Assembly: GCF_902459465.1 (NCBI RefSeq) | Contig: NC_047062.1 | Coordinates: 26,102,001-26,166,000 of the forward strand | Source of the DNA: Asterias rubens | Taxonomy: Eukaryota | Reading direction: 5' to 3' | DNA: 64,000 nt | Part shown: positions 28,298-36,409 of the stretch, in pieces | Layout: every line of letters starts with the position of its first letter | Position numbering within the stretch: the first letter of the stretch is position 1 | Position numbers and translations under genes: made by a program | The notes under the pieces: generated by a model | Told to the model about the DNA's origin: nothing | The model's database searches: none | Seen by the model: the letters and a program-made list of their open reading frames with translations, nothing else

Positions 28298-28555
28298 NNN
28301 NNNNNNNNNNNNNNNNNNNNNNNNNNNNNNNNNNNNNNNNNNNNNNNNNNNNNNNNNNNNNNNNNNNNNNNNNNNNNNNNNNNNNNNNNNNNNNNNNNNN
28401 NNNNNNNNNNNNNNNNNNNNNNNNNNNNNNNNNNNNNNNNNNNNNNNNNNNNNNNNNNNNNNNNNNNNNNNNNNNNNNNNNNNNNNNNNNNNNNNNNNNN
28501 NNNNNNNNNNNNNNNNNNNNNNNNNNNNNNNNNNNNNNNNNNNNNNNNNNNNNNN
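28298..28555. other. Assembly gap or masked run (258 N)
   Basis: Run of N. Confidence 1.
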
Positions 28556-28686
28556 ATGGGGGTATCAACCCCTCGGTAAAGTGAACGCTCAGTTTTGTTC
28601 AAAAAGTGTAAAAGGGGGGCATTTCATACATTGCACATAATCATATGCACCCTCTATGCATTATTTACTTATTTGTATAAGTATTT

Positions 28687-28881
28687 NNNNNNNNNNNNNN
28701 NNNNNNNNNNNNNNNNNNNNNNNNNNNNNNNNNNNNNNNNNNNNNNNNNNNNNNNNNNNNNNNNNNNNNNNNNNNNNNNNNNNNNNNNNNNNNNNNNNNN
28801 NNNNNNNNNNNNNNNNNNNNNNNNNNNNNNNNNNNNNNNNNNNNNNNNNNNNNNNNNNNNNNNNNNNNNNNNNNNNNNNNN
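28687..28881. other. Assembly gap or masked run (195 N) hiding the LINE 3' junction
   Basis: Run of N directly abutting the LINE 3' UTR. Confidence 1.
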
Positions 28882-29061
28882 TCAAAGCAAACACAAAATA
28901 TACAGAATTTACAAAAAACATAGAAACTAAAAAGTTACGTTAATAATAGACAATAAATAACTGTGACAAAAAAGATCAGTAGCTGGGATTGAAATAACGC
29001 CCAAATTAACACTTAAGCAAATACATTAGCATGGCATGGTAAACAAGGAATAGAAACAGAA

Positions 29062-32000
29062 TTACAGAGTCCATTCAATGGCATTATCAGTGATCTTGAA
29101 CATGTTGCAGAGACCCCATTTCTTGAGGAAGAGGGGAACATTGTTCTGGAGCTGGTAGTAGCGGTACTCTATTATGATTTTAATTTTGATACGGTGTTTC
29201 CAGGTGTGAAGGCAGTCTTTGAGATTGGAGTGTACATATTAACCAGTAAACACTAGCTTTAAAGCTAACAATTAAATAATTGGCTAAATCAACGTTTTCT
29301 CTCGGTCGGCCCCTGCTGTGGTGGATGAGGCACCAGTATGTTTCGAAAGTTAGTGTCATTGTGGGAAGTAGTTGTGTGATGCATCGATGCAGAAGGTTGA
29401 GTGCTGGTTGAATTGATGGACAGTGGAAGAAGAGATGTAGCAGAGTTCCTTTTTCTGATGGTCCACACCAGCCGCACGTTTTTGGTAGACTTCGGTCGAT
29501 GTAATGGAGAACTTCCTGCGAGGGTAGAATTTTATGCAGTAACCGGTACTGTACATCACCCTCTTTCTTGGAGATGGGTGATTTGTAAACATTTTTCCAC
29601 GGTATTGTAGTGTTCATTTGCAGGATGTCCCTGTGCCAAGGGGTTCGGGGGTTGTCCGGCAGAGTATTGAGTTCGTTGTTGAAGACTGTGTACAGGTGTT
29701 TGGAGGGAAAGTTGGATTCACTTTTGATGTCGTTAATTTTGATGTCAGGTGTTGGAAAGTTCAAGTGGGGAAAAGACTCAGTTCCTTCGTCAGGAGTCGT
29801 TGTAGCACCCCTTTTGTCGAAGAGTTTGGGGAAGAGATCTCGTAAGGTTTGTCTTATGTGTGACAATTCTGTTGCAAGTGTTCTTGAAGAAAGCGGGCGT
29901 AGTCCCATCCGATGCTGTTTTTGAACGTCTTCAGCTGAGATCCACTTTCCGTTCTTGTCGAGTAGTTGACTGATTAGTGTGACACCACATGAAAGGAGCC
30001 GACCAGAGAGAAGTTTTTTGTTACCATGGCTACATAAAATCAAACTATTAATAGGCATATTCACAACATAATTAACAGAGGCAGGTGGTACGCTCGTGGT
30101 GGCTTTCGATGTGATCCAAGCTTTGAGAATTTCTGCTTGGAAAACGGGGAGACTGGTAAGATATTTCACTTCAAGATTGGTATAAAAGAGTTGAAAATCG
30201 TGACCTAGATTACGATACATGTGACAATAGTGGATAAGAAAATAAAAGGCAGGGTGTTTATTTTTACAAAACAAACGCTGAAGAACAGAAAATCTATAAG
30301 TCATCACACGGGATTTAAGACAGACAAGACCAAGTCCCCCTTTCAATGGGGACTGGAAAAGCACTTTTCTATTGAGCATATGACGTTTTTGAGACCAAAC
30401 AAAATTGATGAGAGTTTCCTGGAGTTCATCTAAAACTTGTTCTGGTAGAGGGAGAACAGCGAGAAAATGCAGCAATTTCGAGGCAGCTATCTGATTGGCT
30501 ATAATGATTTTGCCTTTGAAAGACATGGTCCTTGCTAGACCACTCCACCTCGAAAGAGCGTTATTCAGTTTTTCTTTGCACAATTTCCAGTTTTTTTGTC
30601 TAGAAGTTTCTGTGTTTCCCAGATGAACTCCAAGGAATCTGACATCACTGTTGTTCCAGAGAAAATTGAGTGGTTGGTCTTGTCTGTCTATCCATGCTCC
30701 GACCCACAACCCTTTACATTTATTAACATTAAGACAAGCAGATGATGCCCGACTGTAAATAGTGTAAATATCATTCAATACTTGAAATGCTTTGTTGGAT
30801 GAAACAAAAACTGTGACGTCATCTGCATAAGCAGAAACAGTCAGGATCCTGTCGGAACCCGGAAGTGACATACCATAATTTTGTAAGTTACGTCTGATGG
30901 TATGAAGAAGGGGTTCGATAGCAATGGAATATAACAACCCTGAGAGGGGGCATCCTTGACGAATACCTCTCTCAAATGGGAGTGGGGCTGTTAGCGTGGA
31001 CTGGACTTTGACTGTGCTTTGGACATCCGTGTAAAGAAGACGGATGAGGGAAACAAAGTGCTCACCAAAACCCATTGTTTGCAGCGTCTTAAGTAAGTAG
31101 TCATGGTCAATGCTATCGAACGCCTTCTTTTGGTCCAAATTACACAAGGCGAGAGGCAGGTCAGAATGGTTGGCGTACATGATGCTGTCTCTTATGACAT
31201 TGATGTTGTCATAAATGGGGCGCTCTGGAACTGCATAACATTGATCGAGGTGAACGACGTCGCCGATGACATTTTTCAGCCTGTTGGCCAAAGCTTTGGC
31301 GAGAATTTTATAGTCAGTGTTGAGGAGGGAGACTGGTCTCCAGTTGGAGATTTCCTGAAGGTCCCCCTGCTTGGGCAGGAGAGTAATGACAGCTCTCATG
31401 CACGTTGTGGGAAGGGTGAGGCCATCTAGACCAGGGGTTTTATTTTTATTGAGTTGTTTGACGGCTTGATCCAATTCTTCAATTGAGATTAGTAGATCAC
31501 ATGTTTCAGAATCGGCGGGATCAAGGGTGGGTATGTTCTTGAAAAGGTAATTCTTTGCAGTTTGGGAAGTGGGAACATGAGAATAGAGGTCTTTGTAAAA
31601 GGAATGGACATGCTGGCGTATTTCACTCGGATCTTCTGTGACAATGCCATTGCTTAATCGCTTTCCGTGGTGAGTATTTGCAGAGGAGTTTTGTTTTTCC
31701 AGATTGAAAAAGAACGTTGAGCATGAGTCACCCTCGCTTTCGAGTTGAAAGCGCGAGCGAACTATGGCTCCTTGAGCTTCCTGTTTGTAGATGTTATTGA
31801 GTGCATGTCTCTGATCGAGAAGGAATTCTTTCATATCTGGGCTGAGATCGGGGGAGGATTGAAGGTCATCAATGTCATTCTGGAGTTTTTGAATCAGAGC
31901 ACGTTTTTCATTGGCACATTTTGTACCATAGGTCTGAGTGATGTTTTTGATATGGGCTTTGCCCATGTCCCACCAAGTACAAATATCAGGGTAAGAGGGG

Positions 32001-32860
32001 AGTTTAGTTTGCCAATTAGTCCAGAACAGGGAGATGATGTGTTTGTAGTTTTCGTCTTGGAGGAGAGTGTTGTTAAAGTGCCAGTAGACGCTTCCCTTGG
32101 GACGATGTGAGCTAGATTTACAAGCAACACTGACTGCACTGTGATCTGACAGGCTGCAAGGGATTATGTTGCATTTAGAAACAGTGGAAGCCAAATGCGA
32201 AGGTAGGTATATGCGATCAAGCCTCGCTTTCGACATAGTTATATTGTTGTTACGGAGCCAGGTGTATTTCCTTTGTTCTGGGTTATGTTCTCGCCAAATA
32301 TCGCAAAGAGTGTTTTTGTTGACCAGATTCGACAGGGTGGTGGCTATTTTGTGCCTTTTCTCGTGAGTGATAGCAAGGCGGTCAAGAGAGGGATTGTGGG
32401 TACAGTTAAAATCACCGTCTATAAGTATTTCACCTCGATCATGCTGTGCACAGTGGCGTTCCAGAGCTTCCAACATTTTTCCTGCCTCTACGTCTCCTTG
32501 TGGAACAAGTACATTATACAGATGATATTTATTAGAATCAAGTTCAATTTCAGTGTAAAGAGCGTAACTTTGATAAAGAACAGCATGACTAAAAAGCACA
32601 GATATATTATTTTTGACAAGAGTAGCCACGCCCGATCCCCTCGTTTTGCCTGGAGTACTATTGATTTGATGTTGCCAATGTTTCAACACAGTTGAGGAGG
32701 TAGGTGAATCATTGACTTCTTGTAAGAAGACTACGTCAGGGTTAAAACAAGACTGTTTAATGAACTCATGGAATGAGGTATTACGAGTCGGATTGGAGCA
32801 TCCTCCCGTGTTTATTGATACGAGAGAGAACGCCATACTGACTAACAGAAAATAGTTCAT
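29062..32860 (-). pseudogene. Tx1 ORF2 (endonuclease/reverse transcriptase)
   Basis: FLQE, GDFN, RLDRIY, SDH (APE); PGLDG, WRPVSLLNTDYKI, LDQKKAFD, GIRQGCPLS, YADD (RT); CGWC...HLFFHC. In-frame loss of ~27 aa between GLDGL and TLP (~31418) and a frameshift near 29220 (true C-terminus ...IEYRYY...FLKKW...EWTL* ends 29062). Confidence 0.92.
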
Positions 32861-32863
32861 CAG

Positions 32864-34464
32864 TCATTTTGGAATCAGGCGTGACACATCTTCTATGTCT
32901 AGACCTTTGACAAGTTTGCGGATTCTCATTTGCATATTTCTGTTTAGGAGGGGGGGGGAACTACGCAGGGGTTTCAGTTGTTTTACAAGCCCAGGGATGT
33001 CTCAATTGAACTTTTTGGCTGCGTGCTTTTACACATTTCAGAAAGGCTGTCATTTGTTTTTGCGAGAGGGGGCCTGTGGGGATGGACAAGTCTCCTTCTT
33101 TGCACTCCAACTCACTGGGTTGCGAGTTGGTTTCGGATAGGATGGATGCCGTGTCGTCTGTTTCGATGTCACTCATATCCACCCTCTCCTGTGTTGCATC
33201 TGGGGGTAGTTGAGATTGATGGGAGACGTCACTAGCGTTGTCGTCATCACCATCAAGAGCTTGAGTGAGGGATGGTGTGTCTGTGTGGTCATCATTTGGT
33301 GGTTTTAGTGTCTTTTTCGGAGGAGAGTCGGACTTCAGTTTGGTAAGTCTATGACTGGGTGGAGACGGGGTCTTCTTTTTCCGTTTTCTCAGGACTTCCG
33401 AGAACGTCTCCCTTGATGGTCTAGGAGATTGATCTGTAGCTTTTGGGATCGGAGTCACCAATGCTGGAGTAGTGGGTGGGTCTGGATTGGGTGAGTGGGT
33501 TGGTGGTTGGGAAGGGCTTGGGGAATTTTGGGGGTTAGGGTTGAGGGGGCGGGGTATGGGTGGGGTTTGAGAGGGCTTGGAGTGCGGTTTGGTTGAGGGT
33601 TGGGTTGGGGATGAGGTTTGGGTGGGGGATGGGGGTGAGGAGGGGGGTCGTACCCCAGCCTGCTTCGTTTTGAGCTTTTGGTTCTTCGTTGTCATTGGTA
33701 GCTTGGTTTTGACGGTTTCTAGCTGATTTCGGTGGGTGTTTTGGGTCAGATTTGCTTCGGTGCACGAAGGTTGGTTTGGGGTTGATGGGGTTTTTGTCCT
33801 GTGATCCGTCATCTTCGCTGTCGTCTGATGCTGCGGTTTTCTGTTTCTTGCAGTTTCTCCGTGTGTGTCCATGTTCCCCACAGGCAAAACATTTAACCAA
33901 AATCTGTGGAAAGGAAAACCCTGTAGTTTCCCCCTGCGTAAGCGATGTTAATATGACCAGGGATATTGATATTTGGCTCTATGAAAACATGCACTTGGTG
34001 GCGGAATGATAGAACATGAGCCAAGTTTTCCTTCATTCCAATGGGTATGGATCTGATGGGTGAAACAATGTTACAGAAATCGCTAATGTTTTCTTCTAAA
34101 ATATGGTCTGGAATTTCAGGATAAACATTGGAAAAGAACTAATCAAGTCGTTTGACGTACAAGCGGTGAAATATAAATCAAAGATAATATAAACCATACC
34201 TTGTGTAACAGCTTCTTCAGCGTGTTTTCTATCGTTAAAATACATGGCTACACGATTTCCTGCTATTCTGGATGCATAGAGGATCGTCTCGGGTGGTAGG
34301 GTTTTAGCCATTTCATTGACATAAGTTGAAATCGGAACATTCTCTCTCACATCAAAGACTATGCCATTGTTGCGGCTCATTTTAGAATGTTGACTATTGG
34401 TATACATGGAATGTCCATTGTCGGTCCGGGGCTGGTATGCCCTCGCTCTCCCACCCCGGCTCAT
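32864..34464 (-). pseudogene. Tx1 ORF1 (gag-like, zinc knuckle), fragmented
   Basis: YASRI...VAMYF, LSNVYPEIPD, HVLSFRHQV, CFACGEHGHTRRNC (CCHC), long P/S/T-rich tail; several frameshifts and a stop; TGA at 32864-32866 is 3 nt before the ORF2 ATG. Confidence 0.85.
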
Positions 34465-34680
34465 GGTGCCGTTGGGGTAGTGAGGGCGAGATCACCCGAT
34501 GCCACAACCAGAAATGCAAGAAAACTACACCAAAATATATAAGAAAAATCCCCAGGATAGTCCTGAGGGTTCTACAACATAATTACAATATATGGTAATA
34601 ATTACGATACATACAGTAGGTCCGAAGACGCTCAAAAACCAAAATTTAGCCAGCCACGATGTACGAGCCTACCACCAGTA

Positions 34681-34695
34681 GATTGATCGATTGAT

Positions 34696-34724
<29 letters not shown>
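34681..34724. repeat. (GATT)n microsatellite at the LINE 5' junction
   Basis: 11 units, two of them GATC. Confidence 0.98.
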
Positions 34725-34726
<2 letters not shown>

Positions 34727-34826
34727 CTTTTTTGACTTTTCAAAGCAAACACAAAATATACAGAATTTACAAAAACATAGAATCTAAAAAGTTACATTAA
34801 TATTATAATAGACAATAAATATCTGT
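34725..34826 (-). mobile_element. 102-bp 5'-truncated copy of the same Tx1 3' end
   Basis: Near-identical to 28882-28965, adds the terminal GAAAAAGTCAAAAAAGTC, flanked on both sides by (GATT)n (second tract 34827-34846). Confidence 0.9.
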
Positions 34827-35174
34827 GATTGATTGATTGATTGATTGACTGTTTTTTATTTTTTTTTATTTTTTTTTTATTTGAGTGTTCGTTTGTTTGT
34901 TTGTTTACGAATCAGGGAAGCCATTTATCATTGTTGCATAAAATATGACTGATGGGCGTTGTTTATAGTCTGGGTCTCTAAACATAAACAGGAGAGCTGT
35001 TCCAGCTACCTGGTCGGAGCTGGTTAGAGTATTAAATATTATATAATAATAATAACAACACAATGTTGTATGAAAACGAAAAGCGTTTCGGCTTGGCAAG
35101 TCCGGTGTAAGGTCCGATAACTCCAATGAATAAACAGCATCCTTCAAAATGTAAAAACAAAAAAAGGAGACCGC

Positions 35175-36115: not shown

Positions 36116-36409
36116 GGTGCGTTCGATGATCCCTGGGTCGACCCCGCGGTTCCCATCAAGCTAATCGAACGATCACACTCGCCCTCTCGTGGTAACGTCA
36201 TGCACCTCGGGTCACCCCAAGTGACCCACTCCACAAGCAGGGCATTTTTGGCTGACCCGGGTGAGCCCCTGGATTGACGTTAAACCTATTTGAACGCACC
36301 GGGGCAGACCGGGGTCGACCCAGGGAAGCTAAACGAACGCACCCAAAGCTATTCGAACGCACCGGGGGCAGGCCGGGGTTGACCCAGGGATGCTAAACGA
36401 ACGCACCCA
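36116..36409. mobile_element. GC-rich MITE with duplicated right end (Harbinger-like)
   Basis: Left end GGTGCGTTCG...CCCTGGGTCGACCCC; right end GGTCGACCCAGGG..GCTAAACGAACGCACC present twice (~36310-36343, ~36375-36409). Confidence 0.6.

What the first reader, a model, noticed from the sequence alone, without database searches (positions are those of the whole stretch)
28687..34850. Tx1-clade LINE apparently specific for (AATC)n/(GATT)n microsatellites: two independent insertions in one tract
Seen, on the element strand: (AATC)5, then a 102-bp 5'-truncated copy ending GAAAAAGTCAAAAAAGTC, then (AATC)11, then the 5' end of the full-length element, whose own 3' junction falls in an N gap. So two insertions of one family sit in the same tetranucleotide tract. 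Established: several Tx1-clade LINEs are target-specific through their APE endonuclease (Kibi/Koshi for TC/TTC-type repeats, Keno for U2, Dewa for tRNA spacers). Inference: this is an AATC-targeting family; I do not recall one being described, but cannot check. Its endonuclease would be a candidate new sequence-specific nuclease.
Basis: partly seen in the sequence, partly recalled or inferred. Interest (0 to 1): 0.75.

Follow-up and report, generated by a model that had tools for sequence, protein, structure and literature searches.

The report
Starfish LINE that inserts into AATC repeats
A jumping gene (a LINE retrotransposon of the Tx1/L1 group) in a starfish genome lands in (AATC)n repeat tracts; this adds one more repeat to the list of targets known for this kind of site-choosing element, rather than revealing a new kind of element.

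Summary
On the minus strand the order is (AATC)5, a 100-102-bp 5'-truncated copy, (AATC)11, then a 5.8-kb LINE whose 3' tip lies in the N gap. These are the only AATC tracts in the 64-kb window.

An independent full-length copy (L002) has AATC-like units directly before the same 5' end and at least 13 AATC units after its 3' end. Public contigs show copies truncated at three other points, each preceded by AATC units. In the ORF2 tree the family groups with an (ATTC)n-associated sister family. Together they are sister to about 20 families, of which those examined lie inside (TTC)n or (CT)n on both sides, often head-to-tail. This group sits next to Tx1-ORF2-like fish proteins. All sampled families share the 3' end AATAAAG..TTGAAAAGTC[A(n)GTC] followed by the repeat.

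Caveats:
- The sample is small.
- The window copy is decayed (broken ORF1, deletions and a frameshift in ORF2).
- Its 3' junction is hidden in the gap, which I did not fill.
- Whether the endonuclease or pairing between the RNA end and the target sets the specificity is untested.

Searchable papers list TC, TTC, TTCC and TTTC as Tx1 microsatellite targets, not AATC. I rate it a new member of a known kind.

The parts
28687..28881 (.). Assembly gap (N run) hiding the last ~15-20 nt of the long copy and its 3' junction
   Evidence: Other copies carry about 17-22 more nt after the last readable base. The gap was not filled.
28882..34680 (-). Length-complete but decayed copy of the LINE (5' UTR, ORF1 remnants, ORF2, 3' UTR)
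   Evidence: It is 97.2% identical to the intact copy L002, with frameshifting indels.
34465..34680 (-). 5' UTR; the element starts TACTGGTGGTAGGCTCG directly after an AATC unit
   Evidence: L002/L003 have the same start after AATC-like units.
32964..34464 (-). ORF1 remnants with a CCHC zinc knuckle, broken by 1-, 2-, 4- and 17-bp indels
   Evidence: L002 has an uninterrupted 518-aa ORF1.
29180..32860 (-). ORF2, an open frame of 1226 aa: APE endonuclease, reverse transcriptase, zf-RVT. It lacks 27 aa before the RT domain and 3 aa in the endonuclease hairpin, and its C-terminus is frameshifted at 29240
32141..32818 (-). APE-type endonuclease domain (residues 15-240), catalytic N, E, D-x-N, D and D-H present
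30620..31375 (-). Reverse transcriptase domain (residues 496-747)
   Evidence: RVT_1, E 9.5e-34.
28882..29179 (-). 3' UTR as far as readable. This copy has lost the 13 bp that hold AATAAA in other copies
34681..34726 (-). (AATC)11: seven pure units after the short copy's 3' end, then GATC AATC GATC AATC before the long copy's 5' end
34727..34828 (-). 5'-truncated copy (100 nt plus 2-nt TC microhomology) ending GAAAAGTCAAAAAAGTC
34827..34850 (-). (AATC)5 preceded by AGTC, upstream of the short copy
34851..34885 (-). A-rich run ending AAAAAACAGTC just before (AATC)5. Possibly the tail remnant of a third, extremely truncated copy (speculative)
   Evidence: It resembles the A(n)GTC end seen.

Best explanation
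This is a family of Tx1-related LINEs (ORF1 with a CCHC knuckle; ORF2 with an APE endonuclease, a reverse transcriptase and a C-terminal zinc motif) that integrates into (AATC)n/(GATT)n microsatellites.

Likely mechanism:
1. The endonuclease nicks the GATT strand just after GA (inferred).
2. The exposed ...GA-3' end pairs with the ...UC-3' end of the element RNA, which carries the conserved terminus GAAAAGUC, often repeated as A(n)GUC (inferred).
3. Reverse transcription is primed there and often stops early, giving 5'-truncated copies.
4. The second cut also falls in the tract, so each copy ends up with AATC units on both sides. The tract survives and can be hit again. This gives the chain seen here: short copy, AATC tract, long copy.

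Shown: the flanks, the chains, the conserved 3' end, the constant junction phase GTC|AATC, and intact catalytic residues. Inferred: the nick position, the RNA-DNA pairing, and the endonuclease's share in target choice.
For: AATC on both sides:
- The window's long and short copies.
- L002/L003, where six AATC-like units precede the identical 5' end and at least 13 units follow the 3' end.
- L001, where the 3' end is followed by (AATC)13 and then unique DNA.
- Contigs from other runs in which copies truncated at 28934, 30164 and 29182 continue upstream into AATC units, one of them with only 3 units before unique DNA.

Background rate: there are no other AATC tracts in the 64-kb window and none in the roughly 70 kb of the relatives' loci.

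Relatives: the ORF2 tree puts the family with an (ATTC)n-associated family (support 100). Together they are sister to 21 families, within a fully supported 25-row group next to Tx1-ORF2-like proteins. Sampled members lie in (TTC)n on both sides next to unique DNA (L004, L006, L007/L008, L012), or in (CT)n as three head-to-tail copies (L005).

Shared 3' end: AATAAAG-N7-10-TTGAAAAGTC-[A3-11 GTC]-repeat is shared across these families, always in the phase GTC|repeat. The relative L011 sits in a 270-bp satellite at ...GAC|ATAATT, and its terminus reads GAAAAGAC-AAAAGAC instead.

Endonuclease: catalytic residues are present, and the best PDB match is the L1 endonuclease carrying the grafted Tx1 hairpin.

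Recent activity: intact copies exist (L002 ORF1 518 aa, ORF2 1297 aa), so the family was active recently.
Against: - The sample is small: about 6 of 8 readable 5' junctions in the AATC family show AATC.
- L001's 5' end abuts a piece of ORF2, not AATC.
- Two contigs at 29182 continue into unrelated sequence.
- The one ATTC-family copy seen (L010) is 5'-truncated and has no ATTC upstream.
- The 3'-side tracts are longer and purer than the 5'-side tracts. This suggests that part of the 3' repeat is made anew at each insertion.
- The G in A(n)GTC cannot come from a pure AATC target. The 3' end is therefore at least partly RNA-templated, and the pairing model is incomplete.
- The 3' junction of the window's long copy is unknown because of the gap.
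- No Repbase reference sequences were available, so identity with or distinctness from Kibi/Koshi is untested.
Confidence: 0.8

Rival explanations
1. Tail-driven targeting. The AATC repeat is mainly the element's own RNA-templated 3' tail, made by read-through or reverse-transcriptase stuttering. Insertion into AATC tracts follows from annealing of that tail to any nicked GATT strand. The endonuclease itself has little sequence specificity.
For: - The 3'-side tracts are long and pure (13 or more units in L001 and L002). The 5'-side tracts are shorter or degenerate.
- The terminal motif is itself repeated with a variable A run, as in LINEs whose reverse transcriptase slips at the RNA end.
- The terminal dinucleotide changes with the target in L011, which points to pairing.
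- L010 has ATTC only on its 3' side.
Against: - An AATAAA signal about 20 nt before the end predicts RNAs that end before any AATC.
- The TTC relatives have short, similar-sized tracts on both sides next to unique DNA (L007 6 and 6 units; L004 3 and 7), which looks like a split target rather than a tail.
- Related Tx1 and R1 elements are thought to choose targets mainly through the endonuclease (PMC4494074).
- This rival concerns the cause of the specificity. It still yields an AATC-specific element.
Confidence: 0.3
2. One event, not two. The short copy, the AATC tract and the long copy were made in a single retrotransposition. After copying one RNA to its 5' end, the reverse transcriptase jumped to the 3' end of a second RNA and copied about 100 nt of it.
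For: - Head-to-tail chains are common in the whole group (L004, L005, L006).
- L001 shows an ORF2 fragment joined directly to a 5'-truncated copy, which looks like a template switch.
Against: - It needs RNAs that carry 11 AATC units at their 3' end.
- The four units next to the long copy's 5' end are degenerate (GATC variants), as in an older tract. L002 shows different degenerate units at the same place.
- The short copy itself has (AATC)5 upstream.
- Sequential hits on one target are the usual reading for target-specific elements (PMC4494074).
Confidence: 0.15
3. There is no specificity. The element and the AATC tracts lie together by chance or by passive accumulation in repeat-rich DNA.
For: Only a handful of copies could be examined.
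Against: - The junction phase is the same in independent copies from different assemblies.
- AATC tracts are otherwise absent from the window.
- Copies truncated at different points all abut AATC.
Confidence: 0.03

Closest known systems
Koshi, the (TTC)n-specific Tx1-clade LINEs of pufferfish, and Kibi, the (TC)n-specific ones of teleosts (Kojima and Fujiwara 2004, as cited in PMC4494074 and PMC3812793)
   Same: APE plus RT LINE of the Tx1 group that sits inside one kind of microsatellite. The sister group of the AATC family found here lies in (TTC)n and (CT)n.
   Different: The target is a mixed tetranucleotide, AATC, not a pyrimidine-only repeat. The host is an echinoderm. No Kibi or Koshi reference sequence was available, so direct relatedness is untested.
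Crocodilian Tx1 families with a preference for (TTCC)n or (TTTC)n (PMC4494074)
   Same: Tx1-group LINEs that target tetranucleotide repeats. The criterion is the same: the repeat in the flanks of many copies.
   Different: Those targets are still all-pyrimidine on one strand. The preference was measured on many copies, whereas here only a few were seen.
Tx1L of Xenopus (ORF2 = Swiss-Prot YTX2)
   Same: The nearest named relative of ORF2 is a YTX2-like protein at 33% identity over 95%. The endonuclease matches the L1 endonuclease with the grafted Tx1 hairpin (2v0r) better than native L1 endonuclease.
   Different: Tx1L targets a DNA transposon (Tx1D), not a microsatellite.
Waldo/Mino (R1 clade; ACAY and AC repeats) and Dong (R4 clade; TAA repeats)
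   Same: LINEs specific for microsatellites (PMC3812793).
   Different: They belong to other clades. Dong uses a restriction-like endonuclease.
LINEs with their own short-repeat 3' tails (CR1, L2, UnaL2 type; from my own knowledge)
   Same: A conserved 3' end followed by a short tandem repeat, and a terminal motif that can be duplicated.
   Different: Those insert at unrelated sites and carry the repeat only on the 3' side. Here the repeat is also found before the 5' ends.

Membership tests
Tx1 clade (L1 group) of non-LTR retrotransposons | ORF2 with an N-terminal APE-type endonuclease carrying the catalytic residues | tested here: met
   Pfam Exo_endo_phos, E 7e-14. N, E, D-x-N, D and D-H align with L1 endonuclease residues N14, E43, D145/N147, D205 and D229/H230.
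Tx1 clade (L1 group) of non-LTR retrotransposons | Reverse transcriptase that groups with Tx1 rather than L1 or other clades | tested here: inconclusive
   In the tree the 25-row group lies next to proteins that include one named after Tx1 ORF2 ('YTX2'). The score is 624 bits to that protein against 250 bits to human L1 ORF2p. No curated Tx1, Kibi, Koshi or Keno references were available.
Tx1 clade (L1 group) of non-LTR retrotransposons | ORF1 with a CCHC zinc knuckle, placed ahead of ORF2 | tested here: met
   zf-CCHC in the ORF1 of L002, L006 and L007. ORF1 and ORF2 overlap by 4 nt in L002.
Microsatellite-specific LINE (Kibi/Koshi type) | The same repeat flanks copies on both the 5' and the 3' side | tested here: met
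   Two independent full-length copies and at least four truncated copies. Exceptions are L001's 5' side and two contigs at 29182.
Microsatellite-specific LINE (Kibi/Koshi type) | The repeat is seen in over 20% of all flanks genome-wide (criterion of PMC4494074) | not testable with these tools
   Only the window, three outside copies and contig ends could be read. The whole genome was not searchable.
Microsatellite-specific LINE (Kibi/Koshi type) | The endonuclease nicks the target repeat specifically | not testable with these tools
   This needs a biochemical assay.
LINE with its own repeat tail inserting at unrelated sites | The repeat lies only 3' of the element, and 5' flanks are unrelated sequence | tested here: not met
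   AATC precedes 5' ends at five different start points. TTC precedes the 5' ends of relatives next to unique DNA.

The most novel reading that the evidence does not exclude
In this group the target is read partly by base pairing. The last two or three bases of the conserved RNA terminus (G-UC for TC-containing repeats, G-AC for the satellite target of L011) pair with the nicked target strand. A change of those bases, together with changes in the endonuclease loops, would then be enough to move a family from TTC to ATTC, AATC or a satellite. That would make the group a natural series of retargeted LINEs, useful for working out how APE-type elements choose their sites.
Probability: 0.3. Interest if true: 0.65.

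Novelty: new member of a known kind. Interest (0 to 1): 0.5.

Why it matters
Target-specific LINEs avoid damaging genes by landing in harmless repeats. They are also studied as templates for site-directed gene insertion.

The microsatellite targets described for the Tx1 group in the papers I could search are all pyrimidine-only: TC, TTC, TTCC and TTTC. An AATC-specific family and an ATTC-associated sister, next to TTC, TC and satellite-specific relatives that share one 3' end, form a compact natural series. In such a series the determinants of target choice (endonuclease loops versus the RNA terminus) can be mapped by comparison and by simple nicking assays.

The finding also explains why AATC tracts in this genome may come with LINE fragments, and why assemblies break there.

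Tried and rejected
- Intron idea: I first suspected a GT..AG intron in ORF1 (about 34115-34207). I rejected it because L002 reads straight through this stretch as a 518-aa ORF1, and the window copy simply has 1- to 17-bp indels.
- 'Intact ORF2' rejected: the open 1226-aa frame hides an 81-bp and a 9-bp deletion and a C-terminal frameshift.
- Two scans of JGI metagenome contigs, one with a 5'-end pattern and one with a 3'-end pattern, found nothing.
- An ORF1 word search found no further AATC-family ORF1 apart from L002/L003.
- L009 turned out to be an internal fragment with no junction.
- Read laying skipped the repeat stretch 34678-34860, so the full-length 5' junction could not be counted in the runs.
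- Literature searches for AATC or ATTC as LINE targets returned nothing relevant.
- Scan notes for this genome hold no earlier record of this family.
- Not run: structure prediction of the endonuclease and the large representative-protein search. Neither claim depends on them.
Full report
**What is in the window.** Everything of interest lies on the minus strand. Reading 5' to 3' on that strand:

- An A-rich run ending AAAAAACAGTC.
- (AATC)5, at about 34848-34827.
- A 100-nt copy of the element's 3' UTR (102 nt counting a 2-nt TC overlap), at 34826/8-34727. It ends GAAAAGTCAAAAAAGTC.
- (AATC)11 at 34726-34681. The first seven units are pure and the last four read GATC AATC GATC AATC.
- The element proper, starting TACTGGTGGTAGGCTCG at 34680 and running to 28882, where an N run begins.

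A 25-nt probe from the short copy matches only the two expected sites (0 expected by shuffling). (AATC)4 occurs only in these two tracts in the 64 kb (0.03 expected). The short copy is about 90% identical to the long copy's 3' end and has two indels.

**The gap.** The N run 28687-28881 starts where the last 15-20 nt of the long copy and its 3' flank should lie. The 130 readable bases beyond it (28557-28686) are an island between two N runs and show no similarity to the element and no AATC. Public contigs that reach 28891/2 come from other copies of the family and do not bridge the gap. Continuity across the gap and the long copy's 3' junction are unknown.

**What the element encodes.** ORF2 (29180-32860, minus strand, 1226 aa) has three Pfam domains:

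- an APE-type endonuclease (residues 15-240);
- a reverse transcriptase (496-747, E 9.5e-34);
- a weak zf-RVT motif.

ORF1 carries a CCHC knuckle.

The window copy is complete in length but decayed. Against the intact copy L002 it is 97.2% identical. It differs as follows:

- ORF1 is broken by indels of 1, 2, 4 and 17 bp.
- ORF2 has lost 81 bp just before the RT domain and 9 bp in the endonuclease hairpin.
- A 1-bp insertion at 29240 replaces the C-terminal end of ORF2.
- A 13-bp loss removes the AATAAA signal in the 3' UTR.

An intron I first suspected in ORF1 is not real, because L002 reads through that stretch as coding sequence.

**Other copies of the family.** The word search found a 95%-identical ORF2 cluster. 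Three outside contigs were informative.

- L002/L003 are one contig filed twice. It is a full-length copy with both ORFs open (518 and 1297 aa). It begins with AATC AATC AATA AATC AATT AATC directly before the same TACTGGTGG start. It ends ...GAAAAGTC A8 GTC followed by at least 13 AATC units. The degenerate units before its 5' end differ from those in the window, so this is a separate insertion.
- L001 ends ...GAAAAGTA A9 GTC (AATC)13 and then unique DNA. Its 5' side is truncated in ORF1 and joined to a 136-nt ORF2 fragment, so it says nothing about the 5' flank.

Logan contigs of four runs, labelled as four organisms, cover the element at 90-99% identity. Their loose ends show three truncated copies:

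- One truncated at 30164 runs upstream into at least six AATC units.
- One truncated at 28934 has about three units and then unique sequence.
- One truncated at 29182 has 10 extra nt and then three units.

Two contigs at 29182 run into unrelated sequence. The tool skipped the repeat stretch itself, so the full-length 5' junction could not be counted there. In total about six of eight readable 5' junctions abut AATC. A tail added at random sites cannot explain this, because the copies start at five different internal points.

**Relatives.** ORF2 proteins at 45-60% identity were traced to their contigs.

| Locus | Identity to the family | Setting |
|---|---|---|
| L010 | 60% | Ends ...GAAAAGTC AAA GTC (ATTC)n. 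This copy is 5'-truncated with no ATTC upstream, a counter-example for the sister family |
| L004, L006, L007/L008, L012 | 45-48% | (TTC)n on both sides, next to unique DNA. Examples: L007 6 and 6 units; L004 3 and 7; L012 10 units upstream |
| L005 | about 47% | Three head-to-tail copies separated by (CT)n |
| L006, L004 | as above | Also show a 3' end, a repeat tract, and then the 5' end of the next copy, the same chain as in the window |
| L011 | 52% | Lies in a 270-bp satellite |

A maximum-likelihood tree of 46 ORF2 proteins gave three results (quick search, LG+G4, SH-aLRT support only):

- The window copy and its family group with the ATTC family (support 100).
- That pair is sister to 21 families, including the TTC and TC families examined (support 92), within a 25-row group with support 100.
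- The group's nearest neighbours include a fish protein that its source names after Tx1 ORF2 ('YTX2').

Two further results fit this placement. Human L1 ORF2p is a much weaker match (250 bits against 624). The best endonuclease match in the PDB is the L1 endonuclease carrying the grafted Tx1 hairpin (2v0r).

**The shared 3' end and what it suggests.** Every family ends AATAAAG, 7-10 nt, TTGAAAAGTC. This is often followed by a second unit, A(3-11)GTC, and then the repeat, always in the phase GTC|AATC, GTC|ATTC or GTC|TTC. All these repeats contain TC. If the GATT strand (or GAAT, GAA, GA strand) is nicked just after GA, the primer's ...GA-3' can pair with the RNA's ...UC-3'. That would give exactly these junctions.

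L011 fits the idea. Its satellite target reads ...TTGAC|ATAATT, and both terminal units of the element read GAC, not GTC. This is one contrast only, so I treat it as an inference.

The model is incomplete. The G of the second unit cannot come from a pure repeat, so at least that unit is RNA-templated. The 3'-side AATC tracts are longer and purer than the 5'-side tracts, so part of the 3' repeat may be made anew at each insertion.

The endonuclease keeps all catalytic residues. The whole 25-row group has (V/I/M)PQ where the three outgroup rows read YAPN, YAPT or HSPT. In the alignment to the L1 endonuclease the L1 residue Y115 falls at this motif.

**Comparison with what is known.** The papers I could search describe these Tx1-group microsatellite targets: (TC)n for Kibi, (TTC)n for Koshi, and (TTCC)n or (TTTC)n for crocodilian families. 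They also describe U2, U5, 5S, tRNA, transposon and satellite targets (PMC4494074; PMC3812793; PMC4640811). I found no AATC or ATTC target. I could not see Repbase entries or the figure that lists all targets.

The family works like Koshi and Kibi and probably belongs to or beside their lineage. It adds a new repeat with mixed bases as a target. I rate it a new member of a known kind.

**Verdict.**

| Claim | Judgement |
|---|---|
| Observation | Confirmed |
| AATC-specific integration | Supported, about 0.8 |
| The endonuclease is the main determinant | Open, about even odds against RNA-target pairing |
| Two separate events | Likely; a single event with a template jump is not excluded |
| Interest | Moderate |

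Earlier scan notes gave the host (a starfish, named there as Asterias rubens). They also mention a U2-linked Tx1 element elsewhere in this genome. I did not test either note. The scan had not recorded this family before.

Noticed in passing
L011:6700-6800 and L011:12640-12830: A 52%-identical relative is inserted in a 270-bp satellite with about 25 units. Its 3' terminus reads GAAAAGAC-AAAAGAC, matching the target's GAC. The same rare satellite variant (CAATCCCGTTG) lies on both sides, which suggests a target-site duplication of roughly 120 bp.
   Followed up: partly
window 32141-32818 (minus strand); alignment: All sampled members of the microsatellite-associated group have (V/I/M)PQ where the three outgroup rows read YAPN, YAPT or HSPT. 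In the alignment to the L1 endonuclease the L1 residue Y115 falls at this motif. It is a clade-wide change next to the active site.
   Followed up: no
window 32239: A 9-bp (3-aa, AAG) length difference lies in the endonuclease hairpin loop. The insert is absent from the window copy and run X4, in a minority of run X15, and present in runs X1 and X17 and in L001 and L002. This is the loop known to shape target choice in the L1 endonuclease.
   Followed up: no
L001:1-136: A copy truncated in ORF1 is joined directly to a 136-nt sense fragment of ORF2 from the same family. This is either a template switch during reverse transcription or an assembly chimera.
   Followed up: no
window 28882-29282: Summed contig depth is two to four times higher over the last 300-400 nt than over the body, and many contigs break at 29182. 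This fits many 5'-truncated copies, or a short non-autonomous derivative that shares the 3' end.
   Followed up: no
L005:1-11894: Three head-to-tail copies of a (CT)n-associated relative lie on one 20.7-kb contig. The first copy's 3' UTR is cut short exactly where the next copy's (CT)n and 5' end begin.
   Followed up: partly
window 28299-28686: A second N run (28299-28556) leaves a 130-bp readable island between two gaps. The assembly is unreliable on this side of the element.
   Followed up: no
window 36282-36409: Two copies of a 64-bp GC-rich tandem unit lie about 1.4 kb upstream of the element. They are unrelated to it.
   Followed up: no
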